The position numbers and the translations under genes were made by a program. Shown here piece by piece: positions 6,665 to 31,329 of a stretch of 38,846 nt of DNA. The notes under the pieces are model-generated. The model saw only the letters and a list, made by a program, of their open reading frames with translations. It searched no databases and was not told the DNA's origin. This stretch comes from Salisapilia sapeloensis CBS 127946 (lineage: Eukaryota; Protista; Oomycota): contig JAADVB010000180.1 of assembly GCA_023334545.1 (NCBI GenBank), positions 1-38,846 of the forward strand, read 5' to 3'. Each line of letters begins with the position of its first letter. Position 1 is the first letter of the stretch.

Positions 6665-8002
6665 CTACACACGCACATTCGGGTCCGTCTGCTGCTGCCA
6701 CGCATTCAGCAGCTCCAACCCTCTCTCCACTTCACTCGAGGCAGGCTCTTCCGTTCGATTCGCGACACCTGCCTCCAACTCTTCATCCGACGAGTCCGTC
6801 GTCGTATCACTGTTACCATCGTGCAGCAGCTCCTTGACCTCATCAACCTTTTGCGTCTGCTGCTCTTGCGACAGCTTCGGCTCTTCCTGTTTCTTCGGGA
6901 AGCAGTTGAAGCGAACCCAATTGAGACCGATACCGGAGAATGCAAGCGTCAGTCCGACCGTCTGCTCCATCGACAGCACATGGCCAAAGAGGATGACGGA
7001 CAGCACGATCGACAGCACCTTGCGACACGTGCCCACGATACTCGTGGTCAACGCACCAAACTTGCTGATGGTAAAGAAGATGAAGCCTTGGCCCAGAGCT
7101 CCCGTAAGACTGACGAGCGCCAGGTCCGGCAGTGACGGAATGACGTAGCGCACAAAGGTCGGGACTTCACCCATGACGATCATACCGATCAAGGCGAAGA
7201 CACCTTTCCACATATTCACGTAGTACATGAGGTCGAAGGCGCCAATGTGGTACTGCTCCAAGTACTTGTCTTCAAGCGCTCCAGTCGCACCGTCGAAGAG
7301 GAGCGAGAGGACGAGGAGAGACATGCCGAAGAAGAGGTTGGGCGTGTGCTCTTCTTCGCCATCGAGCTTGGGTGCAGGCGTGCCTTCACGCTCTTCTTTC
7401 TCGTGCGCCGTGCCGACTAGGAAGACGGCGACACCGGCAGATAGCACGAGGACCGAAAGATACTTTTTCAACGGATAGTTCTTTCCCAAAAAGACTCCCA
7501 TGAGCATAACAGGGATACTCTTGCATGACTTGCCCAAGATACGCGTGATAAACGTCACGTAACGAAGAGCAACCATTGATGCGATCGTAGATCCAAATGC
7601 TAGCATACCGACTAATGCCACGTATTTCTGGGGCATGTCGGATTTCTTTTCCCTCGCAGCAAGGTGCAATCCCTTGGCTGCAAGCGCGTAGAAGACACAT
7701 GTGACGCAAGTGAGCGATAATTCACCGAGGACACGGTGCGTGGTAATTTTCTCCAATACAACCGCGTTAAGCGAAAAGGAGATCATAATACCAGTACAGC
7801 AAAAGGCTAGTAACCAGACACTGTCACTACGTCTAGACGGAGGCGTTCGTTCAGCAGGTTGGATGCTCGGCAGCGTCTTATCGAACCCGACCGACTTCAC
7901 ATCGTCTGACTTTTGTCGAAGAGCTTGCTTCTGATCGGCATTCACAGCGATCTCGGCGAACACTGGGTTCGTGTTGGAAGGAGCGTCTGCACTGCACACC
8001 AT
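6665..8002 (-). CDS. UAA-family nucleotide-sugar transporter (SLC35B1/HUT1-like)
   Basis: Multi-TM ORF with ILGKSCKSIPVMLMG, GALGQGFIFFTISKFGALTTSIVGTCRKVLSIVLS. Substrate cannot be assigned from sequence. Confidence 0.9.
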   Translation of the reverse strand: MVCSADAPSNTNPVFAEIAVNADQKQALRQKSDDVKSVGFDKTLPSIQPAERTPPSRRSDSVWLLAFCCTGIMISFSLNAVVLEKITTHRVLGELSLTCVTCVFYALAAKGLHLAAREKKSDMPQKYVALVGMLAFGSTIASMVALRYVTFITRILGKSCKSIPVMLMGVFLGKNYPLKKYLSVLVLSAGVAVFLVGTAHEKEEREGTPAPKLDGEEEHTPNLFFGMSLLVLSLLFDGATGALEDKYLEQYHIGAFDLMYYVNMWKGVFALIGMIVMGEVPTFVRYVIPSLPDLALVSLTGALGQGFIFFTISKFGALTTSIVGTCRKVLSIVLSVILFGHVLSMEQTVGLTLAFSGIGLNWVRFNCFPKKQEEPKLSQEQQTQKVDEVKELLHDGNSDTTTDSSDEELEAGVANRTEEPASSEVERGLELLNAWQQQTDPNVRV

Positions 8003-8388
8003 GATCGCGTTCGGAACTTGGCTTCAGAAGCTTGAATGGCGATTCGAAAGGAAGATCCATGCCTGCCATTGCTTTCCCGGCAGGAAAATGTGCTGGGAGG
8101 ATGCCTCTTTCTCATTGGATGTATGTGTCCAATCAAAGACGAGGTTTGTCGATATTCACAAAGTCCTTCCTTTGTGAAACGGAGCTTCTGTAGCAAAATA
8201 GGAAAAACGATAGTTGTACGCTTTCATGTTGATTTCTGTATGTAGCTTCAAGTGAGAAACAATTGACGTTAAACCATCACGAGGCCAGACGAAGAGACAC
8301 GAAGATCCTGAACAGACGCTTGCGGATAGTTTATGCGCAGGAGACACCATCGCTTTGATTCGACCTAGACGTGTCGATATCTACTTGT

Positions 8389-8442
8389 CTGCAGACACGT
8401 TAGACACATAGCTGCCTTAATAACAATTCATTCTGTACTTAC
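8389..8442 (-). other. Probable 5'-UTR intron of the nucleotide-sugar transporter transcript
   Basis: Minus-strand donor AG|GTAAGT at 8442, branch-point-like CTAAC at 8403-8399, acceptor TGCAG at 8389; 54 nt, matching other introns here; flanking exons lack an ORF continuous with the CDS. Confidence 0.6.
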
Positions 8443-8596
8443 CTACAAAGCGACGCTTCAGTCCACCGTTCAGTCCTCCACTTCTTTCCATAATCGGCTT
8501 AATTTAGAAAGCCAGAAATAGTCCTCGAGCGACTGCGTCCTGTGGCGGCAGTTTTCATCATCTGGCCTCGTCCTCGCGATAGGACTCACGCGTCCA

Positions 8597-8603
8597 TCAT
8601 TTC
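8597..8603 (+). promoter_or_regulatory. Possible oomycete-type initiator (TCATTTC)
   Basis: Matches YCAYTYY 27 nt upstream of the PDE ATG at 8631. Short motif, weak evidence. Confidence 0.3.
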
Positions 8604-8630
8604 CTGGTCCGTTGTAGCTAAGACACGTAC

Positions 8631-10853
8631 ATGACGTCTCCGTCTTTACCTAGTCGGCCCATGCATTCCCCACGCAACTCGACCGGTGATACACAGTACC
8701 AACCGAAGCATACTTCCTTCACCACCTTCTTTAAACGTTACTCGTATGCTGGCTCTGCAAGCCCAGGACACAGAGACAAGCGAGTCGCACCAGCCGATGC
8801 GCTACCCCATCAAGGAACCCAGACCGTCGGACGTGGAGCACGGCGTCGTGCGAGGAGCATGGAGCTTTTGGGCGAGAACGAACATGCGAGACTCCAACGT
8901 AGCCATCGTCGAGCAATGCATCCGTGGCGATTAAAAGTGGCTGAGTTCATGCGCCATCTAGCTGTCGAACTCTTTTTCGTCATTATCGTCCTACTCTATG
9001 GTGCCTTCGTTACCTTCCAACTGACCATTGATGAAAGTGACATGTCCGAAGCTGACCACAAGGTGTACACAAGTGTCGTCGACACAACAGACATTATAGT
9101 TTGTTCTATTTTGATGCTAGAGCTACTACTAAAGCTCTTTGCTTTTGGATGGGTCTACTTGAAAGACTTCTGGATCCTCTTCGATGCCATCGTTGTCATT
9201 GCCTCCTTTGTCATGGGCATTGTCGCTGCGACGGGGTCCCAGTCCACAGTTCTACTTCGTATCCTACGTCTACGTATAGTACTTCGCATCCTTCGTATTC
9301 TCGTTGTCTTTGAACGTCTCAAGCAACAATCGCGATCGCTTAAGCGACCACACAAGCTTCAGATGTCATCTCCAGTCGAGCTAGTTTTAAATGTCTTACG
9401 AGAACTTCAGTACCATCCAGCGCTACGCAAAGAACTGCGTCAGGACATTCACTACGCCATCGATGCGATCAAGAATAATCGATTATATAACGCAGATGAA
9501 GGCATCTTGGCTGGTGAAGGTGTCGATGATGCGACACAGCAGTGGCTGATCGGTGAAGTGCTAAAAGGTGGAATGGATGCTGATGCACTCCTTTCGAACG
9601 GTCATTCCAATGACAATGTGCATGATAAGCAAAATGTGAAAAGCGCTGGTGGAAAGGATCAGGCAAGAGCGAAAGCAAAAATGTCGATCCGGTCGTCTGG
9701 ATCAATCAGTCATGATATCACCCAAAGTGGAACGAGGAAAGTATCGCTAGGTCGAGGTGCAACGATGAAAGACTTGATGCCGACATTGGACACTGCTTCT
9801 GAATTTGAACTCGAGAACCTCCTTCAGAGCGCAGATGCATGGGTTTTCGATATCTTTCGGGTTCAAATGCTGTCTGGAGGAAATGCATTGAGCTACCTCG
9901 GCTATTTTCTACTGAAGGAATATGCCAGTACAATTTTCCAGACTGACTCATTCGTATTTGTGCATTTCCTCATGGAAATCCAGCGAGGGTACGTTGACAC
10001 GAACGCTTACCATAATGCTATTCATGCAGCAGACGTCATGCAGACTGTATACTACTTCTTAATGCAGCCAGAACTCTCTCCTTTCCTCCGACCACTTGAC
10101 AAGGCGCTGGCTCTCGTCGCTGCTGCTATCCACGATTTCAAGCATGACGGCTTTAACAATAGCTTCCACATTTCCACTGCGTCTGAGATTGCTCTTCGCT
10201 ATAATGACCATGCCGTCTTGGAAAACTATCACGTAGCGCAGTCTTTCCTTGTCATGAAAGATCCCAAGCTGAACATTCTAGGAAACCTTTCTCATGAAGA
10301 GTTTAAGTACAGTCGCGACTTGCTCATTCAAATGGTACTCGCTACGGACATGGCGAAGCACTTTGAAGACGTCGCATTGTTTAAAGCCAATATACTACCA
10401 GGCCCAGAGGAAGACTTGGCGATTAAGAGTGTAGGGGACAAGAAGCTACTATTGAAAATGATTCTACACACGTGTGATGTTTCGAATCCCGCGAAAGATC
10501 GAGAGATCATGCTCAAGTGGACGGATCGTGTCGTGGAAGAGTTTTTCATTCAAGGCGATTTAGAGAAACAGTTGAATCTCACCGTGTCGCCATTCATGGA
10601 CCGGGAAACTATTGTCCTAAAAAAGATGCAAGTTGGGTTCCTCGACTTTATCGTCGCTCCGCTCTTTGGCGTTTGGGCACAAATCTTGGATAACGTTGAT
10701 GTCGTTGCGTACAAAACACTGCAGTCGAACCGCGAGTTCTGGTCGTCACTACCGGACGAGTTCAAGCCACGCCACATCAAGGACGTACTTCGAGACATGC
10801 ACTTGTATAATCGACCGACACAACCTTACCTCGCCACGATCTCCGATGAGTAG
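8631..10853 (+). CDS. Voltage-sensor domain (S1-S4) fused to class I 3',5'-cyclic nucleotide phosphodiesterase
   Basis: Single 740 aa ORF. aa ~110-230: four hydrophobic helices with S2 LELLLKLFAFG, S3 FWILFDAIVV, S4 LLRILRLRIVLRILRI. aa ~400-710: YHNAIHAADV, IHDFKHDGFNN, VLENYH, LATDM, LHTCDVSNP, EEFFIQGD, MQVGF. Confidence 0.93.
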   Translation: MTSPSLPSRPMHSPRNSTGDTQYQPKHTSFTTFFKRYSYAGSASPGHRDKRVAPADALPHQGTQTVGRGARRRARSMELLGENEHARLQRSHRRAMHPWRLKVAEFMRHLAVELFFVIIVLLYGAFVTFQLTIDESDMSEADHKVYTSVVDTTDIIVCSILMLELLLKLFAFGWVYLKDFWILFDAIVVIASFVMGIVAATGSQSTVLLRILRLRIVLRILRILVVFERLKQQSRSLKRPHKLQMSSPVELVLNVLRELQYHPALRKELRQDIHYAIDAIKNNRLYNADEGILAGEGVDDATQQWLIGEVLKGGMDADALLSNGHSNDNVHDKQNVKSAGGKDQARAKAKMSIRSSGSISHDITQSGTRKVSLGRGATMKDLMPTLDTASEFELENLLQSADAWVFDIFRVQMLSGGNALSYLGYFLLKEYASTIFQTDSFVFVHFLMEIQRGYVDTNAYHNAIHAADVMQTVYYFLMQPELSPFLRPLDKALALVAAAIHDFKHDGFNNSFHISTASEIALRYNDHAVLENYHVAQSFLVMKDPKLNILGNLSHEEFKYSRDLLIQMVLATDMAKHFEDVALFKANILPGPEEDLAIKSVGDKKLLLKMILHTCDVSNPAKDREIMLKWTDRVVEEFFIQGDLEKQLNLTVSPFMDRETIVLKKMQVGFLDFIVAPLFGVWAQILDNVDVVAYKTLQSNREFWSSLPDEFKPRHIKDVLRDMHLYNRPTQPYLATISDE

Positions 10854-10990
10854 ATCGCTACATTACCATTACCAGCGAACATGAAGTATCTACAACAGAC
10901 GATGTCAGTCATTAGGTGGGACGCAAGATGGTCGACATACTACACAACCATGCCGCATCGTACGTTATATTACCTCGCTTATAACTCGTA

Positions 10991-13519
10991 CTAGTTAGAA
11001 TTCAGCGCGTAGTATTTATTGGCCACTGGGTCGTGGTAGCACCGCAACACCGGATCGTAGATTAATTCAATCGACTCACTTGCAACCGCTGATGATTTTC
11101 CTTTCTCTTTATTTCGTCCTTCAGTGCGCAGACTCTCGGTTGACTGAAGCAGGCGCTTGATGCGTTCATTCGCTTCTTTACTATCCATCTCTTCCGTTTG
11201 GTTTGATCTTTCCAGAACAGGTGAAGCGCATTGCTTGCTCTTACGCCAGACATGGACATCTTCACCCTTTGCAGCAGACTCTTGACTGTCGCCACTCTTC
11301 TCTGGTTGATGTGCTTCAAACTCATCTCTGCTAGGACTCGCATCTTTCTCTATTAGATCTCCTATGGTATCACGAACATAAGCACAACCAGTACAAGTAG
11401 AGTAATCCAGGCAGCATTGGACGCAATTACCAAAGTCGAAACTCTCTTCATCGTCAGATCGCTCACGTTCCTCACTTTGATCTACTTGATCCGCCTTCTC
11501 TGGTTTGACTTCCAATCTTGACTGGGACTTTTGTTTTCCAAGGCTCTCGGAAGAAAGCATTATGTCTGCTCGACTGTCTTCGACACTGACATCTTGTAAA
11601 TCATTTGTAAGGTCAATTGACACACTTTCATCTACGTCTGTAAAGAATCCTTCCAAGTCCCCTTGCGATAAATCTAGATCAAAAATACGGCGACCATCCT
11701 CGTCTTTTGACTGCGGACTAGACTCATCTTCCTCATTAATACTACTATTTTCACTCTTATCTCCTTGTATTTCGTTTCTATCATCGTACACGTCCATAGC
11801 ATATGAAGCATTGGCATCTTCAAATTTAGATTTATCACCATTTGAACTCGCCACTTCACTCTTTTTCATCCTTTCATTTCTCTTCTTCGCTAACATTTCC
11901 ATCAACTCTTCGTCGTCATCACTGTCACTGTCATTCTCATCGACAGATACTTCTTTAGTGTCCTCTAATAAACCCCCGTGGTTAACCCTAGTAGACGCTA
12001 GCTCATTCGCCTTCATCTCTTCTTCCGATTGCGTTGGTTCAAGCGAAGGTTTTGGCTCAACCGTATTCAATAACGAGTCAAAGTTGAAAAGATTAGATTG
12101 TGAAGGATGCTCGTCCACGTCTTGATCGTCTTGCAAGACTGCATCTGGCCTTGACTTTGTGCTAAACGCAAAGATGGATTGGCTTGTATCGTACCCAGTA
12201 GATCGCATAGGCTGGATTCGTCTCCTGTCGAACTTGTCTTTGATATCAGTGTCTGGAATGCTAAAGACATCCTCATCCGTTGCTGGTATTTTCGTATGCA
12301 TCATAAATCGATCATGATGCTTCTTACCACTTGCATCGTCGTCATCATCTAGCACATCCAGCTTGTGTCGAATTTCGTCGAAAATCTCTTGTCGACGGGT
12401 TTCTCTATCATCCTTTCGATCCTCCTCCTGCTTGACCTCTTCCTTCTCGCTTTCTTCTTCCGACTTTACCGAAGGTTCAACAACGTTACCTTCAGTCGAA
12501 TCGGTATGCTCTGTCACCGTAACTAAATCACTACTATCGATAAGTTCTCTACCACTAGCTTGGTGATCACGTTCAGGGATTGCAAGACTAACTGGTGAGT
12601 TCGACGACGGCTTATTGAATGGACTTTTCTGTCTGGAGAGATCCTTGATACCCAAGTTTCCGCTCGGCGTTGTTTTCTCACTTCGACCACGTCCACTGAC
12701 TTTGCTTTTCCTATCTTGCATGCGGACTGTATGAGTCTGAGGTCTAACAACGTTTCTTCCTTCGACTACTTTCGGGCGGGTGGAGGCACTTTGCGATAAT
12801 CGACTTTTTGTCACAGTCGGTTGACGAGTATTTGAAATATCCATTGATCCGATTTTAGTGCTCGAGCTTGAATCATTAGGTGGAAGGAAGTACTCTGTCG
12901 GCACTGGATTACGCACTCCAGTAGCAAAAACAAATTGACGAGGAATATCTGTGGTTTGCGCTTGCTTCCCGATGGCAGGGTGATGATCAAGTAGGACAGA
13001 GCTGGTTGGTGCATCTTTCATTACAAACACGCGCTTGAGCTTGCAAGTTCCAGTGATGCTTAATGATTCAACACATCGATAGCTGCATCCTGCAGGAAAG
13101 TAAAGCTCAATCAATGCCATGAGATCGAAAACAAAGTTCATCCAAATATTTCGTGAGATTTGGGATGTCATTGGGATTTGAACGTGGAGCGCATTGAGCG
13201 TTGTCTCTCGAAATGCTGACGAGAACACAAGTCGTCGACGGACACCTTGAAAGTCAGAAAAGCTAACTTCCACCCCAAAGCTTCGTGTGAAGGGGATTTG
13301 AAGTTGGAGAACAAGAAAGCGATGGGCAAGACCAAGAGATGACGCCTTCGGTACTTGCATTCGTGTTTCCGCCCCACCAGCGAGTGCAAATGTATTGCTT
13401 CGAATCACTTTGTCAAAACCACGATTGATTTTCCCTTGTAATTTCCATTTGGATGTTGGATCTTTGCCTTGAGCGCTGAGAAGCTCGACGGATGATCCTC
13501 CTTGAAAGAAAGATGCCAT
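10991..13519 (-). CDS. CFAP20DC: CFAP20 domain-containing protein (C3orf67/CFAP20DC-like), flagellar/basal body
   Basis: Likely start ATG 13519 (MASFFQGGSSVELLSAQGKDP...KW); N-terminal CFAP20/DUF667 domain; long acidic disordered middle; conserved C-terminal ELIYDPVLRCYHDPVANKYY motif. Probable in-frame intron 11430-11362. Confidence 0.85.
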   Translation of the reverse strand: MASFFQGGSSVELLSAQGKDPTSKWKLQGKINRGFDKVIRSNTFALAGGAETRMQVPKASSLGLAHRFLVLQLQIPFTRSFGVEVSFSDFQGVRRRLVFSSAFRETTLNALHVQIPMTSQISRNIWMNFVFDLMALIELYFPAGCSYRCVESLSITGTCKLKRVFVMKDAPTSSVLLDHHPAIGKQAQTTDIPRQFVFATGVRNPVPTEYFLPPNDSSSSTKIGSMDISNTRQPTVTKSRLSQSASTRPKVVEGRNVVRPQTHTVRMQDRKSKVSGRGRSEKTTPSGNLGIKDLSRQKSPFNKPSSNSPVSLAIPERDHQASGRELIDSSDLVTVTEHTDSTEGNVVEPSVKSEEESEKEEVKQEEDRKDDRETRRQEIFDEIRHKLDVLDDDDDASGKKHHDRFMMHTKIPATDEDVFSIPDTDIKDKFDRRRIQPMRSTGYDTSQSIFAFSTKSRPDAVLQDDQDVDEHPSQSNLFNFDSLLNTVEPKPSLEPTQSEEEMKANELASTRVNHGGLLEDTKEVSVDENDSDSDDDEELMEMLAKKRNERMKKSEVASSNGDKSKFEDANASYAMDVYDDRNEIQGDKSENSSINEEDESSPQSKDEDGRRIFDLDLSQGDLEGFFTDVDESVSIDLTNDLQDVSVEDSRADIMLSSESLGKQKSQSRLEVKPEKADQVDQSEERERSDDEESFDFGNCVQCCLDYSTCTGCAYVRDTIGDLIEKDASPSRDEFEAHQPEKSGDSQESAAKGEDVHVWRKSKQCASPVLERSNQTEEMDSKEANERIKRLLQSTESLRTEGRNKEKGKSSAVASESIELIYDPVLRCYHDPVANKYYALNSN

Positions 13520-13810
13520 GGTCTTATGAAGAGCCGTACTAAAAGCGTAGGATACGAAACACGAAACGGCAAGTTCTAATAATAAAATCATCTTTATATT
13601 TGGTAGGAAATATAACATACACTGAGGCTGACGAGCGTAGGATATGACTTTAAAGTCGTCCTGTTCGTGGTCAGCTTGCAAGCCTACACGCTTGGTGCAT
13701 CACAACCTTTATCGTGAGCGTCATAAAGTCTACTTGGACTGCTCTTGGGAATGTACAAATTTATGAGTTTAGTCATCTATCTACGCTCAATGTTGCGCTC
13801 GGCAGCAACA

Positions 13811-27417: not shown

Positions 27418-27522
27418 ATAACCAAAAATAAAAACGGTAGCTCAGTTTTACATACTGCTTGGTCCAGATTGGTTCTAAAAGTAGATGACGATGGGTGTAA
27501 CGATCTGACACTTCATGCGGCG

Positions 27523-30500
27523 ATGAAAGTCGGAAACATGGACTACCCGCCATCAGGTGCACGACCGATGCGCCCACCACCGCACCCCGGACAACCGTTG
27601 CGGACGTTCGTCCATAAGAGCGCACGCTCATTGCTGCAGCATGTTCGAAAGATCGGACCGGGTCGGAAGGATCTACGAAATGCAAATCCCAAGACGATTC
27701 GAAGTATGAGACGAGTGCATCGAGACTTTGAGTCTGTAAAGCCACTCCCATCCAACTTGGTCCAGCAAGACTATGGATGGGTGATTACGCCGAAAGCGGC
27801 GTGGAAAGTCAAGTGGGATCTGTGGATTGGACTTATTATCGTTTATACGATCATCTTGGTGCCCTATCGAATCGGCTTTGCGATTGAACTCGAGCAATGG
27901 GAACAGATACTCAATTATCTTTTTGATGCTAGCTTTGGACTAGACATGGTCTTGACATTCTTCACAGGTTTCTACGACGACGACGTCTTTGTGTATCAGT
28001 ATGGGAAGATTGCTAGGCGGTACTTTCAAAGTTGGTTTTTTGTCGACCTCGTGTCGTGCCTCCCGTTGGACTCACTCATTGAAGCTGCATCAACTGGGAA
28101 TTCATCCTTGCTATCGTTCAAACTCTTTCGCACTGTTCGCCTCTTTCGACTGCTAAAGCTCATTCGAGTACTGCGACTCAAGCGGACATTTCAAACCGTT
28201 CAGATGAATGCTTTGAACGCCCATGTCTTGCAAACAATGAGATCTCTCATGGTCATTATCTTTATCATACACCTTGTCTCTTGCGGGTGGTACATGTTCT
28301 ATACGTGGGATACAACTGGGTCAAACTGGGTGACTGGTAACTATCCAGATGGACTGAAGCATACGTATCTTGTCAGCTTCTACTGGGTTGCCAACACCAT
28401 GATGTCCGTCGGATATGGAGATATCACAGCAGTCACAGACGGAGAAAGGATATACTCGATCTTTGTCGAATGTCTCGGCTCCGTGTGCGTCGGTCTCATC
28501 ATTGCAAATATTCAAATGCTGACAGACAACTTGAATCCACGAGGTGCCGAAATGAACAACAAAGTACAGGAAACGAAAGAGTTTTTATCGAAGAGTAATA
28601 TCCCAAGACGAATGCGACAACGGATCATTTCGCAATTCGAGTATCACTGGAATCGCCGATCGGTATTTGATGAAGATGAACTACTGGACAAGTTTCCCAT
28701 GAGCTTGCAATATGAAATCCTTGCTTCCTCGATGGATTCGTTCGTCCACACGTTTCCATTCTTTGGTGCCACTAGTGTCGACTTTTTCATCGAAGTCATT
28801 CCAAAGCTACGCCCGATATTACTCGGCCCGACGCAAAATTTGGTGGACGCTGAAAGTGTATGGGAAGAGATCTACTTTATATGTAATGGAACAGTGGACG
28901 CTTTGCGAGGAAATCTGGTCGTTGGTAGTCTTACCACAGGTGACATATGCGGCATCGAGTACCTTGTGACGGACCGTAAGCGCTACTTGCACACATATCG
29001 ATCTGTCTCCAAGACAGAGTTATATGCTATCCACAGCGTTGACATGATCGAAGCACTTCCAAAATGCGAAGTTGCAGAGCACTACTTACGAGATCTGTCC
29101 ATCATCTTGCATGACAGATACACAGAGAGCGCAAGTAGACCTCGAAAGCCACTTGTGCGCCAGGAAGGCTCTTTACGCTCTTCAAAGAGGAAATCACAGA
29201 GAGGTCCGGAGCTTTATGCTCAATATCGGCACCGCAAGTCTTACTCGGCCAAACATACATTGGAACAAATTCACCCATTTACAGCCTCGCGTATAAATGA
29301 AGAAGAGGATGGGCCTCACTGGTCTATTATACGCCATTATTCTAAGTGGCGAATCGCATGGGATGTTTTCATAGGCATCCAAGTTGCTTTTATTGCTCTC
29401 TCGGTACCATTTCGTATATCCTTCGATTTGGCAGACACGATGCATCTTATTGTACTTGATCGCACGGCCGATTGCTGCTTTCTATTCGACATTTTGATCA
29501 GCTTCTTTACAAGCTACGTCGACGAAACTGGCGTGGAAGTCTTAAACGTTGTTGACATTCGCAAACATTATTTAAAAACCACTTTCCTTCTCGATGTTAT
29601 ATCGACCATCCCATTTGATGTTATCGTGGATTCCGTGGCATCCTCGGAGCACTTACGCTCGCTTATGTTATTTCGTACCATCAAACTGATTAAACTACTT
29701 CGGCTTATGCGTATCTCCAAACTTTTCAAGGTAGCGGCGCAGTGGGCCTCGGAGTTTGATGTGAATACGGACACCATTCGTCTACTGAAGATACTGTTAC
29801 CGACATTCGTGATCGCCCACTATGTCGGATGCTTTTGGCATTATATTGCCATAGACAGTCTGGACGATGGATGGCTGAAGCATTCGACACCTCCGTTAAC
29901 AGAACAGAATTCCACCGCCACACGCTACATTGCCTCCTTGTACTGGGCGGCAACTACCATGACGACCGTTGGTTTTGGAGATATTGTAGCTATCAACATC
30001 TATGAGCAAGTGTACTCTACGATCGTCATGATCGGTGGGACTACAGTATTTGCTTATGTCGTGGGCACGGTCATTGAAGTGGTGAGCAACTCCAAATCGC
30101 TCACAAATCGAGAGCGCAACATGGGTCAGCGTGTGAATGAGTATATCAAGGAGCGTGGCGTGTCCAGTGAATTTATCAAAGCCTGCCATGAGCATCTACG
30201 TTTCCTCAACGGCGAGAAGACGCTGTTTAATGAAAAGCAATTATTCGATTCGCTTTCGCACTCCCTTCGGAGCGAACTGATTCTGTACTTAAACAATGGT
30301 ATCCTCTCCAACACTCGCTTCTTTGAGAAGAAACCGAAATGGTTTCTGTCGCTCATCTTGCCAAGGATGCAGCCCCAATATTTCTTACCAGGCGACTTGC
30401 TCATTTACAATGGAAACTTGGTCAGCGGCATCTTTTTTCTCATCCATGGCGTTGTCATAGCCAAAGAACCAGTAAAAGATGAAGTAACGCTTCCTTCAAC

Positions 30501-31329
30501 TGCGAGCAGTTATTCGTCCCTCGGAAGAAGACATGCAAACGCTTCCCAGAAAGTTGGTGCGACCACGAGGATCTACCAAGGAGAATTTTTTGGTCACAAC
30601 GAATCATTCGATAATGAGATTGCGAAGTATAACGTATTCGCACTGAAAGCCAGCGGCACATACCTTTTACCGAGGAAGTTTTTGGAGCATATAAAGCTTT
30701 ACTTTCCGGAAGTCATGACAGAAGTGAGTGCGCTCATTCTCAAGTCGGTTCAGAAACAGCAAACCAAGGTCCAGCGCGATCAAAACAATAACGCAGTATC
30801 GATCTTGGGGCAAAGGTCCGATACCTTTGGCAAAACCAGCGGTGGAAATGCGGACGAAAGCGAGTATTTACATGATAATTGTTCGGCGAACCAAAGCGGA
30901 CAAAACGACGTTGTCGAGATGAGTGTAGGTTCACCTCGAGATGATTCGACAGTAGGTAGAGCAAGTGTATCTAGCACGAAGGATGGCCCTGCTAGGAGTA
31001 TATTGGACGGACTTGCAGCTCGAGCTCAGGAAGACAAATCGGAGGCACACTCTAAAGATGAAGTTGAGCACGAACTGCACATCAAGTCAGTGCCAAGAAC
31101 CAGAAGAAGATCATCGCATCGAGTTGCTGTAAATGATTTGAGCGTCATGGACCTGTCTTCGGATGAAGACAAAAAGCGAAGGCAGCAATTACTACGATCC
31201 GTCATACCAATGGCTCCACGGCAGTCGGTGGATCATAGAAGGATCGATGACATTGTTGATAGATTGCTTTCAGGTGATGGATATATAAGTCCTCGCGAAG
31301 ATCCGAGCGAACCACCGAGCACGCCATGA
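27523..31329 (+). CDS. Two-repeat (2 x [6TM + C-linker + CNBD]) cyclic-nucleotide-binding-domain K+ channel (KCNH/HCN/CNG superfamily)
   Basis: Repeat 1: WKVKWD, S4 FRTVRLFRLLKLIRVLRLKR, pore SFYWVANTMMSVGYGDI (GYG 28411-28419), CNBD. Repeat 2: WRIAWD, S4 FRTIKLIKLLRLMRISK, pore SLYWAATTMTTVGFGDI (GFG 29971-29979), CNBD. Start at ATG 27523 or 27538. Confidence 0.92.
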   Translation: MKVGNMDYPPSGARPMRPPPHPGQPLRTFVHKSARSLLQHVRKIGPGRKDLRNANPKTIRSMRRVHRDFESVKPLPSNLVQQDYGWVITPKAAWKVKWDLWIGLIIVYTIILVPYRIGFAIELEQWEQILNYLFDASFGLDMVLTFFTGFYDDDVFVYQYGKIARRYFQSWFFVDLVSCLPLDSLIEAASTGNSSLLSFKLFRTVRLFRLLKLIRVLRLKRTFQTVQMNALNAHVLQTMRSLMVIIFIIHLVSCGWYMFYTWDTTGSNWVTGNYPDGLKHTYLVSFYWVANTMMSVGYGDITAVTDGERIYSIFVECLGSVCVGLIIANIQMLTDNLNPRGAEMNNKVQETKEFLSKSNIPRRMRQRIISQFEYHWNRRSVFDEDELLDKFPMSLQYEILASSMDSFVHTFPFFGATSVDFFIEVIPKLRPILLGPTQNLVDAESVWEEIYFICNGTVDALRGNLVVGSLTTGDICGIEYLVTDRKRYLHTYRSVSKTELYAIHSVDMIEALPKCEVAEHYLRDLSIILHDRYTESASRPRKPLVRQEGSLRSSKRKSQRGPELYAQYRHRKSYSAKHTLEQIHPFTASRINEEEDGPHWSIIRHYSKWRIAWDVFIGIQVAFIALSVPFRISFDLADTMHLIVLDRTADCCFLFDILISFFTSYVDETGVEVLNVVDIRKHYLKTTFLLDVISTIPFDVIVDSVASSEHLRSLMLFRTIKLIKLLRLMRISKLFKVAAQWASEFDVNTDTIRLLKILLPTFVIAHYVGCFWHYIAIDSLDDGWLKHSTPPLTEQNSTATRYIASLYWAATTMTTVGFGDIVAINIYEQVYSTIVMIGGTTVFAYVVGTVIEVVSNSKSLTNRERNMGQRVNEYIKERGVSSEFIKACHEHLRFLNGEKTLFNEKQLFDSLSHSLRSELILYLNNGILSNTRFFEKKPKWFLSLILPRMQPQYFLPGDLLIYNGNLVSGIFFLIHGVVIAKEPVKDEVTLPSTASSYSSLGRRHANASQKVGATTRIYQGEFFGHNESFDNEIAKYNVFALKASGTYLLPRKFLEHIKLYFPEVMTEVSALILKSVQKQQTKVQRDQNNNAVSILGQRSDTFGKTSGGNADESEYLHDNCSANQSGQNDVVEMSVGSPRDDSTVGRASVSSTKDGPARSILDGLAARAQEDKSEAHSKDEVEHELHIKSVPRTRRRSSHRVAVNDLSVMDLSSDEDKKRRQQLLRSVIPMAPRQSVDHRRIDDIVDRLLSGDGYISPREDPSEPPSTP

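What the first reader, a model, noticed from the sequence alone, without database searches (positions are those of the whole stretch)
8631..10853. Putative voltage-sensing phosphodiesterase: pore-less S1-S4 voltage sensor fused to an intact class I cNMP PDE
Seen: one uninterrupted 740 aa ORF. aa ~110-230 (nt ~8958-9320) form four TM helices with S2 D154/E164/K168, S3 W181-x3-D185 and S4 Arg at 210, 213, 215, 219, 222, with no S5-P-S6 pore. A basic linker (RLKQQSRSLKRPHK) and a helical segment (SPVELVLNVLRE...IDAIKNNRLY) follow, then all metal-binding and catalytic PDE motifs (YHNxxHAADV, HDxxHxGxxN, ENxH, TDM, DVSNP, invariant Gln in MQVGF). Established: a sensor wired to an enzyme is the design of voltage-sensing phosphatases (Ci-VSP/TPTE); a membrane sensor wired to a class I PDE is the design of choanoflagellate rhodopsin-PDE; the helical segment recalls, from memory, the pre-catalytic helices of PDE8-like enzymes. 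Inference: membrane potential could directly set cAMP/cGMP hydrolysis. I know of no characterised voltage-gated PDE but cannot search. It would also be an attractive electro-genetic tool.
Basis: partly seen in the sequence, partly recalled or inferred. Interest (0 to 1): 0.9.

Follow-up and report, generated by a model that had tools for sequence, protein, structure and literature searches.

The report
Pore-less voltage sensor fused to PDE
An oomycete gene joins a channel-type voltage-sensor domain that has no pore to an intact cyclic-nucleotide phosphodiesterase; the family is old, widespread in stramenopiles and alveolates, and untested, and it may let membrane voltage control cAMP breakdown directly.

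Summary
Window 8631-10853 (+) is one intron-less 740 aa ORF. It is transcribed colinearly at uniform low depth. Pfam finds only the S1-S4 half of Ion_trans (aa 112-239) and a full PDEase_I (aa 460-691). No hydrophobic segment follows S4, so there is no pore. The modelled N-terminal domain superposes best on the Ci-VSP voltage-sensor crystal structure. All PDE catalytic motifs are intact.

The gene is the single orthologue of a family found in all oomycetes sampled. An exhaustive profile search found about 40 more divergent representatives with the same architecture in Platysulcus, Oxyrrhis, other dinoflagellates, Amoebophrya and Chromera, and a protein-atlas cluster suggests ciliates too. Family-wide, the sensor core is canonical. 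A family-specific linker module sits at a fixed distance after S4.

The oomycete branch replaced the charge-transfer-centre Phe with Leu161.

[quoted passage not shown] It did not read them as a voltage sensor and did not test them. I found no paper on a voltage-regulated PDE.

Best reading: a voltage-regulated, probably cAMP-preferring PDE (about 0.55). It would be a new enzyme partner for the design known from voltage-sensing phosphatases. Function is inferred, not shown.

The parts
8511..11085 (+). Approximate transcribed extent of the gene (5' leader, ORF, 3' UTR)
   Evidence: RNA-run contigs cover 8511-11085 colinearly at depth about 5-8. There are no joints inside the ORF, and depth is 0 beyond about 11085.
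8631..10853 (+). Single-exon ORF, 740 aa plus stop: VSD-linker-PDE protein
   Evidence: upstream in-frame stops; full-length orthologues at 46-63% identity
8631..8957 (+). Cytosolic N-terminal region, aa 1-109, basic (20 K+R against 7 D+E), predicted disordered, with a short motif conserved in oomycetes (R..V.P.D)
8958..9026 (+). S1, aa 110-132 (E113, Y123, Q130 invariant in oomycetes)
   Evidence: DSSP helix 110-132 in the model; hydropathy; conservation
9048..9146 (+). S2, aa 140-172: outer acid D154, hydrophobic plug L161 (the Phe position), inner acid E164, K168
   Evidence: Column 161 is F in 39/41 family representatives, E164 is kept in 40/41, and D154 is D or E in 40/41.
9168..9233 (+). 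S3, aa 180-201: CaV/NaV-type W181-x-x-F184-D185 motif
   Evidence: D185 is invariant in 41/41. It aligns to CaV3 and NaV S3.
9246..9341 (+). S4, aa 206-237: R210, R213, R219 and R222 in 3-residue register, out-of-register R215, then E228, R229, K231
   Evidence: Family-wide, R219 is kept in 34/41 and R222 in 37/41.
9342..9566 (+). Basic post-S4 stretch and the family-specific helical linker module, aa 238-312 (SPVE..VL ... NNRLY ... D..TQ.WL)
   Evidence: Helices at 248-260, 267-281 and 300-313. P248, E250, L285 and Y286 are conserved family-wide. The distance from S4 is fixed at 60-77 aa. No Pfam or PDB relative.
9567..9779 (+). Variable, low-complexity, predicted-disordered tether, aa 313-383
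   Evidence: pLDDT below 40; unalignable among orthologues; tether length varies from 57 to 155 aa in the family
9780..10766 (+). Class I cyclic-nucleotide phosphodiesterase catalytic domain, aa 384-712 (H461, H465, H501, D502, H505, E531, H534, D573, D616, N619, Q667)
   Evidence: Pfam PDEase_I, E 2e-81; PDE4, PDE1, PDE8 and PDE7 structures at E 1e-65 to 1e-54; invariant columns
10767..10853 (+). Short C-terminal tail, aa 713-740, plus stop; lacks the R.RRSV..LL tail of most peronosporalean orthologues
   Evidence: RNA is colinear through the stop

Best explanation
The gene encodes a four-helix voltage-sensor domain (VSD) of the CaV/NaV/CatSper/VSP type with no pore. A conserved linker ties it to a cytosolic, catalytically intact class I phosphodiesterase. 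The most likely mechanism has five steps. (1) The protein sits in a membrane with the N-terminus, the linker and the PDE in the cytosol (shown by topology). (2) S4 carries four in-register Arg and is paired with D154, E164 and D185, so it moves when membrane potential changes (inferred from conservation of every gating hallmark). (3) S4 movement is passed through the basic post-S4 stretch to the helical module 'SPVE..VL ... NKLY', which lies at a fixed distance after S4 (inferred). (4) That module then docks on, or releases, the catalytic domain or its dimer partner across a flexible tether, changing hydrolysis of cAMP (inferred). The variable tether favours a regulatory-module mechanism like autoinhibition, as with PDE4 UCR2 or the PDE1 inhibitory segment, over a rigid lever. 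(5) The preferred substrate is probably cAMP: the best catalytic relatives are PDE4, PDE8 and PDE7, and the DVSNP motif carries the Asn typical of cAMP-specific PDEs (weak inference, partly from memory). The sign of regulation is unknown. Physiologically it would couple electrical signals to cyclic-nucleotide levels in the motile or excitable stages of these protists. It would complement the ion-channel/adenylyl-cyclase fusions known in alveolates (from memory).
For: Architecture: Pfam half-match to Ion_trans plus a full PDEase_I. No further hydrophobic segment, and a positive-inside charge pattern: N-terminus 20 basic against 7 acidic, S1-S2 loop 1 against 5, post-S4 6 against 1. Sensor identity: the sequence matches CaV3 VSD-II, NaV, CaV2, Hv1, CatSper and Ci-VSP. 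The model's best structural match is the Ci-VSP VSD (4g80_S: TM 0.79 by target, rmsd 2.8 A), followed by NavAb/CavAb, TPTE and CatSper. Selection on gating residues: E113, D154, E164, W181, F184, D185, R213, R215, R219 and R222 are invariant in 18 oomycete orthologues that are only 48-63% identical overall. Across 41 representatives from distant lineages the Phe position is F in 39, E164 is kept in 40, D185 in 41, R222 in 37 and R219 in 34. S4 windows hold a median of 6 basic residues. Coupling element: the linker motifs are conserved family-wide (P248 in 29/41, E250 as E or D in 35/41, L285 in 40/41, Y286 in 37/41) at a fixed 60-77 residues after R222. Catalysis: all metal-binding and catalytic residues are intact and invariant. 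One gene, one transcript: colinear RNA contigs run from the VSD through the linker into the PDE at even depth with no joints. The same fusion occurs in more than 90 proteins from oomycetes, Platysulcus, dinoflagellates and Chromera, and a protein-atlas cluster suggests ciliates.
Against: There is no functional datum of any kind. In the oomycete branch, including this gene, the charge-transfer-centre Phe is Leu161, the third register position (216) is hydrophobic, and position 228 is Glu where the wider family has Arg. The oomycete sensor could therefore be shifted or weakened. The tether between the linker module and the catalytic core is disordered and varies from 57 to 155 residues, which argues against tight mechanical coupling. 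The full-length model is only moderate (pLDDT 61, pTM 0.46), and I could not inspect interdomain contacts. Expression is low: depth 5-8 here, and about 1-4 FPKM for the P. parasitica orthologue in zoospores. The published Toxoplasma analysis reports many substitutions among catalytic signature residues in TgPDE4, so not every member need be an active enzyme.
Confidence: 0.55

Rival explanations
1. The four-helix domain serves only as a membrane anchor or targeting device, for example to a flagellar or plasma-membrane microdomain. The PDE is constitutive or regulated by other means such as phosphorylation or Ca2+. The charges would be relics or serve folding or partner binding.
For: The tether between the sensor/linker and the catalytic core is long, disordered and variable in length. 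The oomycete sensor has lost the canonical Phe and one register Arg. Many protist PDEs are membrane-anchored by unrelated TM helices (PMC7720076).
Against: A simple anchor does not need four buried Arg with three matched acidic partners. These are energetically costly in a membrane, yet they are the most conserved residues of the N-terminal half across lineages whose overall identity is only 23-34%. The linker module at a fixed distance after S4 is also conserved.
Confidence: 0.2
2. The VSD works as an accessory or partner subunit of a separate pore-forming channel, or places the PDE next to one (for example a cNMP-gated channel). It would shape a local cyclic-nucleotide microdomain without sensing voltage for the enzyme.
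For: The VSD is closest in sequence to CaV, NaV and CatSper sensors. A CNBD-containing tandem K+-type channel lies 17 kb away in the same window, though linkage in a eukaryote means little. Toxoplasma authors read the domain as a link to cation transport.
Against: I know of no precedent for a free S1-S4 domain replacing a channel's own sensor. The conserved linker directly downstream of S4 points to intramolecular coupling. No co-occurrence test was done.
Confidence: 0.12
3. The VSD itself conducts ions, as an Hv1-like proton channel or an omega-type leak, and the PDE domain modulates or merely accompanies this conductance.
For: Hv1 shows that pore-less VSDs can conduct. The VSD matches Hv1 weakly in sequence (5oqk, E 2e-4) and in fold. 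The missing register Arg at position 216 is the kind of gap that creates omega currents in channel mutants (from memory).
Against: S1 has no mid-membrane acidic residue; its only acid, E113, lies at the cytosolic end. S4 lacks the Hv1 R-x-W-R-x-x-R signature. Better matches are to non-conducting sensors (CaV3, NaV, Ci-VSP). In the wider family the Arg ladder has no gap at that position.
Confidence: 0.08
4. Artefact: two adjacent genes, or an assembly chimera, read as a single ORF.
For: None beyond the fact that the RNA evidence consists of short assembled contigs, not single long reads.
Against: The frame is uninterrupted for 740 codons. The same colinear architecture appears in more than 90 independent proteins from many genomes and transcriptomes. 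RNA contigs overlap across every junction at even depth.
Confidence: 0.02

Closest known systems
Voltage-sensing phosphatases (Ci-VSP, TPTE/TPIP)
   Same: A pore-less S1-S4 sensor with cytosolic N-terminus, a basic linker immediately after S4, and then a cytosolic enzyme. The model's best structural match is the Ci-VSP VSD crystal structure, and TPTE is among the top AlphaFold-DB matches.
   Different: The enzyme is an HD-type class I cyclic-nucleotide PDE, not a PTEN-like Cys phosphatase with a C2 domain. The sensor is closer in sequence to CaV3 and NaV than to VSP (E 6e-16 against 6e-3). The linker is a helical module of about 75 aa followed by a disordered tether of 57-155 aa, not the short VSP linker that binds phosphoinositide (VSP linker details from memory). 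It is restricted to stramenopiles and alveolates as far as sampled.
Toxoplasma gondii TgPDE4 (TGGT1_229405) and TgPDE16 (TGGT1_258508)
   Same: [quoted passage not shown] At about 118 kDa, TgPDE4 matches the roughly 1000-1100 aa alveolate forms found here, such as the Chromera protein of 1083 aa.
   Different: They were interpreted as coordination with ion transport, not as a voltage sensor. [quoted passage not shown] TgPDE4 is reported to have many substitutions in catalytic signature residues, whereas the window protein has all of them. I could not obtain their sequences, so their membership of this family (linker motifs, S4 ladder) is untested.
Ion-channel/adenylyl-cyclase fusion proteins of Paramecium, Tetrahymena and Plasmodium (from memory: Schultz et al. 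1992; Weber et al. 2004)
   Same: A voltage-gated-channel-type membrane module with an S4 is fused to a cyclic-nucleotide enzyme in the same eukaryotic supergroup. They link membrane potential to cAMP.
   Different: Those carry a complete S1-S6 module with a pore, and they synthesise cAMP. Here there is no pore, and the enzyme degrades the nucleotide.
Rhodopsin-phosphodiesterase of choanoflagellates (from memory)
   Same: A membrane sensor domain fused N-terminally to a class I PDE, so that a physical stimulus directly controls cNMP hydrolysis.
   Different: Its sensor is a retinal-binding rhodopsin that responds to light. It is unrelated in fold and lineage to the S1-S4 sensor here.
Hv1 voltage-gated proton channel
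   Same: A stand-alone S1-S4 protein without a pore domain, with weak sequence and fold similarity.
   Different: There is no S1 selectivity Asp, no R-x-W-R-x-x-R S4 motif and no coiled-coil directly continuing S4. This protein carries an enzyme instead.
PDE4, PDE1, PDE8 and PDE7 catalytic domains
   Same: The catalytic domain aligns over about 320 residues at E 1e-65 to 1e-54 with every metal-binding and catalytic residue present.
   Different: There are no UCR, CaM-binding, PAS or REC regulatory modules. The regulatory N-terminus is a VSD plus a module specific to this family.

Membership tests
Voltage-sensor domain (S1-S4 of the voltage-gated ion channel superfamily, Pfam Ion_trans N-terminal half) | Four-helix transmembrane bundle with the VSD fold | tested here: met
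   Pfam Ion_trans at profile positions 4-124 of 241, 51 bits against a cut-off of 25. Four hydrophobic segments. The AF2 VSD has pLDDT 75-87. Foldseek's top hit is the Ci-VSP VSD at TM 0.72-0.79 by target, rmsd 2.8-3.5 A.
Voltage-sensor domain (S1-S4 of the voltage-gated ion channel superfamily, Pfam Ion_trans N-terminal half) | S4 with basic residues at every third position | tested here: met
   R210, R213, R219 and R222 are in register and align with R1, R2, K4 and R5 of CaV3.2 VSD-II. The third register position (216) is Ile, and R215 is out of register. R213, R215, R219 and R222 are invariant in oomycetes.
Voltage-sensor domain (S1-S4 of the voltage-gated ion channel superfamily, Pfam Ion_trans N-terminal half) | Acidic countercharges in S2 (outer and inner) and S3 | tested here: met
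   D154, E164 and D185 are invariant in oomycetes. Across the family they are kept in 40/41 (D or E), 40/41 and 41/41.
Voltage-sensor domain (S1-S4 of the voltage-gated ion channel superfamily, Pfam Ion_trans N-terminal half) | Aromatic (Phe) hydrophobic plug three residues before the inner S2 acid (gating charge transfer centre) | tested here: not met
   The window protein and the oomycete orthologues have Leu161. 39 of 41 wider-family representatives have Phe. From memory, aliphatic substitutions at Shaker F290 keep gating but shift it.
Voltage-sensor domain (S1-S4 of the voltage-gated ion channel superfamily, Pfam Ion_trans N-terminal half) | Gating charge movement in response to voltage | not testable with these tools
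   Needs electrophysiology or voltage-clamp fluorometry.
Voltage-gated cation channel (complete Ion_trans, S1-S6) | S5, pore loop and S6 after S4 | tested here: not met
   The Pfam match stops at profile position 124 of 241. No hydrophobic segment lies between aa 240 and 400 (max KD19 0.48). A true channel in the same window matches 4-234 of 241.
Class I 3',5'-cyclic nucleotide phosphodiesterase (Pfam PDEase_I, HD superfamily) | Full catalytic domain with the metal-binding His and Asp residues and the invariant purine-clamping Gln | tested here: met
   PDEase_I at 273.6 bits, profile positions 1-233 of 238. H461, H465, H501, D502, H505, E531, H534, D573, D616 and Q667 align with the equivalent residues of a PDE4-type structure and are invariant in orthologues.
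Class I 3',5'-cyclic nucleotide phosphodiesterase (Pfam PDEase_I, HD superfamily) | cAMP or cGMP hydrolysis and substrate preference | not testable with these tools
   Only a weak inference for cAMP. The top 60 PDB hits are PDE4, PDE1, PDE8, PDE7 and PDE3 with no cGMP-specific PDE, and the DVSNP motif carries Asn619 (its interpretation is from memory).
Voltage-sensing phosphatase (VSP/TPTE) | PTEN-like phosphatase domain with a C-x5-R active site and a C2 domain after the VSD | tested here: not met
   Pfam finds only Ion_trans and PDEase_I. The protein works like a VSP by design but is not a member.
Hv1 voltage-gated proton channel | Mid-S1 selectivity Asp and the R-x-W-R-x-x-R S4 signature | tested here: not met
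   S1 (aa 110-132) has a single acid, E113, at its cytosolic end. S4 has no Trp.
VSD-linker-PDE family defined here (oomycetes, Platysulcus, dinoflagellates, chromerids) | VSD, followed 60-77 residues after the last conserved S4 Arg by the SPVE..VL ... NKLY helical module, and then PDEase_I | tested here: met
   The window protein has SPVELVL at aa 247-253 and NNRLY at aa 282-286, with 64 residues from R222 to Y286. 41 representatives share this.
PDE8 / PDE4-UCR / PDE1 type N-terminal regulatory helices | Sequence similarity of the pre-catalytic helices to PDE8A_N, PDE4_UCR or PDEase_I_N | tested here: not met
   No Pfam hit at E up to 1 on the whole protein or on aa 234-383. A profile of the linker from 40 sequences finds no PDE in the PDB.

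The most novel reading that the evidence does not exclude
These proteins are a second natural class of voltage-sensing enzymes after the voltage-sensing phosphatases. In this SAR-wide family, S4 movement acts through a dedicated linker module to switch cAMP hydrolysis directly. Membrane potential would then be converted into a cyclic-nucleotide signal without any ion flux. Together with the channel/adenylyl-cyclase fusions of alveolates, this would give these protists voltage control over both synthesis and breakdown of cAMP. It would also give biology a compact, genetically encoded 'voltage-to-cAMP' actuator.
Probability: 0.5. Interest if true: 0.9.

Novelty: new variant of a known kind. Interest (0 to 1): 0.72.

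Why it matters
To my knowledge (from memory), the voltage-sensing phosphatases have been the only characterised enzymes driven by a voltage-sensor domain since Ci-VSP was described in 2005. A voltage-controlled PDE would show that the S1-S4 module is a general-purpose actuator. It would link electrical signalling directly to cAMP and cGMP in a large part of eukaryotic diversity, including oomycete crop pathogens and possibly apicomplexans and ciliates. It would also offer a mechanism for behaviours that depend on electrical and ionic cues, such as the zoospore electroception and K+-induced aggregation discussed in PMC7409359. The family comes with natural variants (Phe against Leu plug, different Arg ladders, tethers of 57-155 residues) that are ready-made material for structure-function work. 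Paired with voltage indicators, it would be an attractive tool for lowering cyclic nucleotides by depolarisation or hyperpolarisation. If voltage turns out not to regulate the enzyme, the finding is still a well-defined, conserved and uncharacterised PDE subfamily with an unexplained charged membrane domain.

Tried and rejected
(1) Ten full-text literature searches for a voltage-sensing or voltage-gated PDE, for VSD plus PDE domain, for oomycete PDE domain combinations, and for orthologue locus tags. The only relevant results were the two Toxoplasma papers and one P. parasitica supplementary table.

(2) The PDE8, UCR or PDE1 origin of the linker helices was rejected. The PDB profile hits to designer PPR proteins have no significant individual stretch and look like repeat-consensus noise.

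(3) The Hv1-like proton channel reading was rejected on S1 and S4 signatures.

(4) A two-gene or chimera artefact was rejected.

(5) The third word-indexed homologue search, using the 33-sequence alignment A3, returned only the oomycete set again and no new taxa. The search with the Chromera VSD+linker added only Amoebophrya. Neither produced Toxoplasma sequences, so TgPDE4 and TgPDE16 could not be tested for the linker motifs.

(6) The ESM Atlas search with the VSD+linker alone gave only generic Ion_trans clusters at 0.77, which is uninformative.

(7) The full-length AlphaFold model was too weak (pLDDT 61, pTM 0.46) and its coordinates could not be accessed, so no statement about linker-PDE contacts was possible.

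(8) The tree could not resolve where the window's organism sits among peronosporalean lineages. It is inside oomycetes and outside Saprolegniales, on a long branch of 0.87.
Full report
WHAT IS THERE. Window 8631-10853 (+) is one uninterrupted 740-codon ORF with in-frame stops just upstream of its ATG. Pfam finds two domains above their curated cut-offs. Ion_trans (PF00520) covers aa 112-239 but matches only profile positions 4-124 of 241, which is the S1-S4 half. PDEase_I (PF00233) covers aa 460-691 and matches positions 1-233 of 238. Hydropathy shows four hydrophobic segments (S1-S4) and nothing between aa 240 and 400 (maximum KD19 0.48). Charge counts give N-terminus 20 K+R against 7 D+E, S1-S2 loop 1 against 5, and post-S4 6 against 1. 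This places the N-terminus, the linker and the PDE in the cytosol. A true channel in the same window (27469..31329) matches the full Ion_trans profile at 4-234 of 241, so the missing pore half is not a failure of detection.

IS IT ONE GENE? Four RNA runs of the same organism hold the locus. Their contigs cover 8511-11085 colinearly at an even depth of 5-8, with overlapping contigs across the VSD, linker and PDE junctions and no splice joints inside the ORF. Depth is 70-230 on the head-to-head neighbour and 0 beyond about 11085, so this is RNA and not DNA background. The contigs are short, so this is consistent with a single intron-less transcript but does not prove one. The same colinear architecture in more than 90 independent proteins settles the point.

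THE SENSOR. Searched alone against PDB sequences, aa 98-240 matches VSD-II of T-type CaV3.2 and CaV3.1 best (E 6e-16 to 7e-14). NaV and CaV2 sensors follow, and then Hv1 (2e-4), CatSper4 and Ci-VSP (6e-3). An AlphaFold model of aa 98-312 (pLDDT 71; VSD part 72-89) superposes best on the Ci-VSP VSD crystal structures (4g7v and 4g80: TM 0.72-0.79 by target, rmsd 2.8-3.5 A). NavAb/CavAb, CatSper and TPTE come next.

The HMMER alignment to CaV3.2 puts R210, R213, R219 and R222 on the channel's R1, R2, K4 and R5. The R3 position is Ile216, and an extra Arg215 lies out of register. L161 falls on the channel's Phe, three residues before E164. The one atypical feature is a Leu in the charge-transfer centre.

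THE ENZYME. The C-terminal 330 residues align with PDE4B, PDE4D, a PDE4-type "Phosphodiesterase" (6ezu), PDE1B, PDE8A and PDE7A at E 1e-65 to 1e-54. The printed alignment shows YHNxxHAADV, HDxxHxG, ENxH, TDM, DxSNP and the purine-clamp Gln all in place. They are invariant in the orthologues. No cGMP-specific PDE is among the 60 best PDB hits. From memory, the Asn in DVSNP is typical of cAMP-specific PDEs. I take cAMP as the more likely substrate, with low confidence.

THE FAMILY. A word-indexed search found 49 oomycete proteins with both Pfam domains at 46-62% identity. They come from Phytophthora, Pythium, Globisporangium, Plasmopara, Peronospora, Albugo, Lagenidium, Saprolegnia, Achlya and Thraustotheca, typically one per species. 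A tree places the window protein inside this clade and outside Saprolegniales, on a long unresolved branch. The host is therefore an oomycete of the peronosporalean line that is not closely related to any sequenced genus in the hit list.

I then searched a profile of the VSD plus linker (A2) exhaustively against 1.84 billion cluster representatives. It gave 2220 hits. Among the best 150, about 40 distinct representatives also carry a PDE domain, according to an HMM I built from the orthologue alignment. Pfam confirmed both domains for all eight of these that I submitted. Named sources are Platysulcus tardus (an early-branching stramenopile), Oxyrrhis marina, another dinoflagellate, Amoebophrya, Chromera velia and MMETSP marine protist transcriptomes. 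The ESM Atlas adds a 248-member cluster that is PDEase_I in 100% and Ion_trans in 73% of members and is mostly from ciliates (score 0.97). That result is a lead and was not verified by alignment. The architecture is therefore old and spans stramenopiles and alveolates.

WHAT CONSERVATION SAYS. Among 18 oomycete orthologues that are 48-63% identical to the window protein, these residues are invariant: E113 (S1), D154, L161 and E164 (S2), W181, F184 and D185 (S3), and R213, R215, R219 and R222 (S4). Across 41 divergent representatives, whose overall identity to the window protein is 23-34%, the conservation at window-protein positions is:
- position 161: Phe in 39
- E164: kept in 40
- D154: D or E in 40
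- K168: K or R in 38
- D185: kept in 41
- R219: kept in 34
- R222: kept in 37
The S4 windows hold a median of 6 basic residues, typically as three consecutive R-x-x-R repeats plus a distal R-K. The ancestral sensor was fully canonical. The oomycete branch then changed Phe to Leu, lost one register Arg while fixing Arg215, and turned Arg228 into Glu. Buried charges conserved over this evolutionary distance are hard to reconcile with a mere anchor.

THE LINKER. S4 is followed directly by a basic stretch and then a helical module. Its motifs, consensus S-P-V-E-R-V-L and N-K-L-Y, are conserved family-wide: P248 in 29/41, E250 as E or D in 35/41, L285 in 40/41 and Y286 in 37/41. The distance from R222 to Y286 is held at 60-77 residues. 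The distance from Y286 to the first conserved Trp of the PDE core varies from 57 to 155 residues. In this protein that stretch is low-complexity and predicted to be disordered. The module has no Pfam family and no credible PDB relative, so the suggested PDE8-like origin is not supported. A module of fixed length attached to S4, followed by a flexible tether, suggests that the module itself is the regulatory element and not a rigid lever. It could dock on the catalytic domain or mediate dimer rearrangement, with S4 controlling its position relative to the membrane.

MECHANISM AND RIVALS. What is shown: the architecture, topology, fold, intact catalytic site, transcription, and deep conservation of the gating residues and linker. 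What is inferred: S4 moves with voltage, this is relayed by the linker module, and it changes hydrolysis of cAMP. The direction is unknown. I put this reading at about 0.55. The rivals are:
- anchor or targeting domain only: 0.20
- partner of a separate channel, or microdomain organiser: 0.12
- conducting VSD of the Hv1 or omega type: 0.08
- artefact: 0.02

COMPARISON WITH THE KNOWN. By design this protein works like a voltage-sensing phosphatase, but it is not one because it has no PTEN-like domain. It is not a channel (no pore) and not Hv1 (no S1 Asp and no RxWRxxR motif). The closest published items are Toxoplasma TgPDE4 and TgPDE16. [quoted passage not shown] A P. parasitica zoospore transcriptome table lists the orthologue PPTG_01456 with the automatic tag "PDEase_I Ion_trans" at about 1-4 FPKM (PMC7409359 supplement). 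Ten full-text searches found no paper that proposes or tests a voltage-regulated PDE. Subscription-only literature was not searched. From memory, the channel/adenylyl-cyclase fusions of ciliates and Plasmodium, and the choanoflagellate rhodopsin-PDE, are the nearest conceptual relatives.

VERDICT. The gene is a member of an uncharacterised SAR-wide VSD-linker-PDE family, best classed as a new variant of the known sensor-enzyme design. Interest is 0.72. If voltage control is demonstrated, it would be a second class of voltage-sensing enzymes and a useful tool.

Noticed in passing
window 27469-31329 (+): A 1286 aa ORF encodes a tandem two-repeat cation channel: two full Ion_trans matches, Ion_trans_2 and a cNMP_binding domain. 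It is a possible downstream target of cyclic-nucleotide changes, 17 kb from the VSD-PDE.
   Followed up: partly
window 6665-8455 (-): A UAA-family nucleotide-sugar transporter gene lies head-to-head with the VSD-PDE and is expressed 10-40 times more strongly. Its 5' leader intron at 8389-8442 (GT..AG on the minus strand) is seen spliced in one RNA run. The two divergent transcripts start less than about 100 nt apart or overlap; one contig reaches 8792.
   Followed up: partly
window 10991-13681 (-): A CFA20-domain (ciliary/flagellar-associated) protein gene is convergent with the VSD-PDE. The PDE 3' UTR (to about 11085) overlaps the end of its ORF. RNA depth is 0 at 11078-11400 in the same four runs, so this flagellar gene is silent in samples where the VSD-PDE is expressed at low level.
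   Followed up: partly
window 10877 and 11042: Two single-base differences (G>A and C>T) in the 3' UTR distinguish the RNA runs. They are probably allelic or strain polymorphisms.
   Followed up: no
P0045 (Thraustotheca clavata, 1233 aa), residues 1-530: This orthologue's gene model carries a Cys-rich N-terminal extension of about 530 aa that all other oomycete orthologues lack. It is probably a merged gene model.
   Followed up: no
P0082 (734 aa) and P0159 (633 aa): Both have good matches to the VSD+linker profile at about residues 360-590. Neither has a PDE domain by Pfam or by my PDE HMM. They may be truncated models or VSD-linker proteins with a different partner.
   Followed up: no
P0071, P0079, P0086, P0087, P0097, P0111, P0128, P0131, P0177, P0181, P0197, P0209: The alveolate-type members (about 920-1270 aa) carry an extra 300-460 aa in front of the VSD. 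Pfam found no family there in the four members submitted (P0071, P0079, P0086 and the similar P0081). Its nature is unknown.
   Followed up: no
window 10767-10853 (protein C-terminus): The window protein ends about 25 residues earlier than most peronosporalean orthologues and lacks their conserved R.RRSV..LL tail. RNA is colinear through the stop, so this is not a missed intron.
   Followed up: partly
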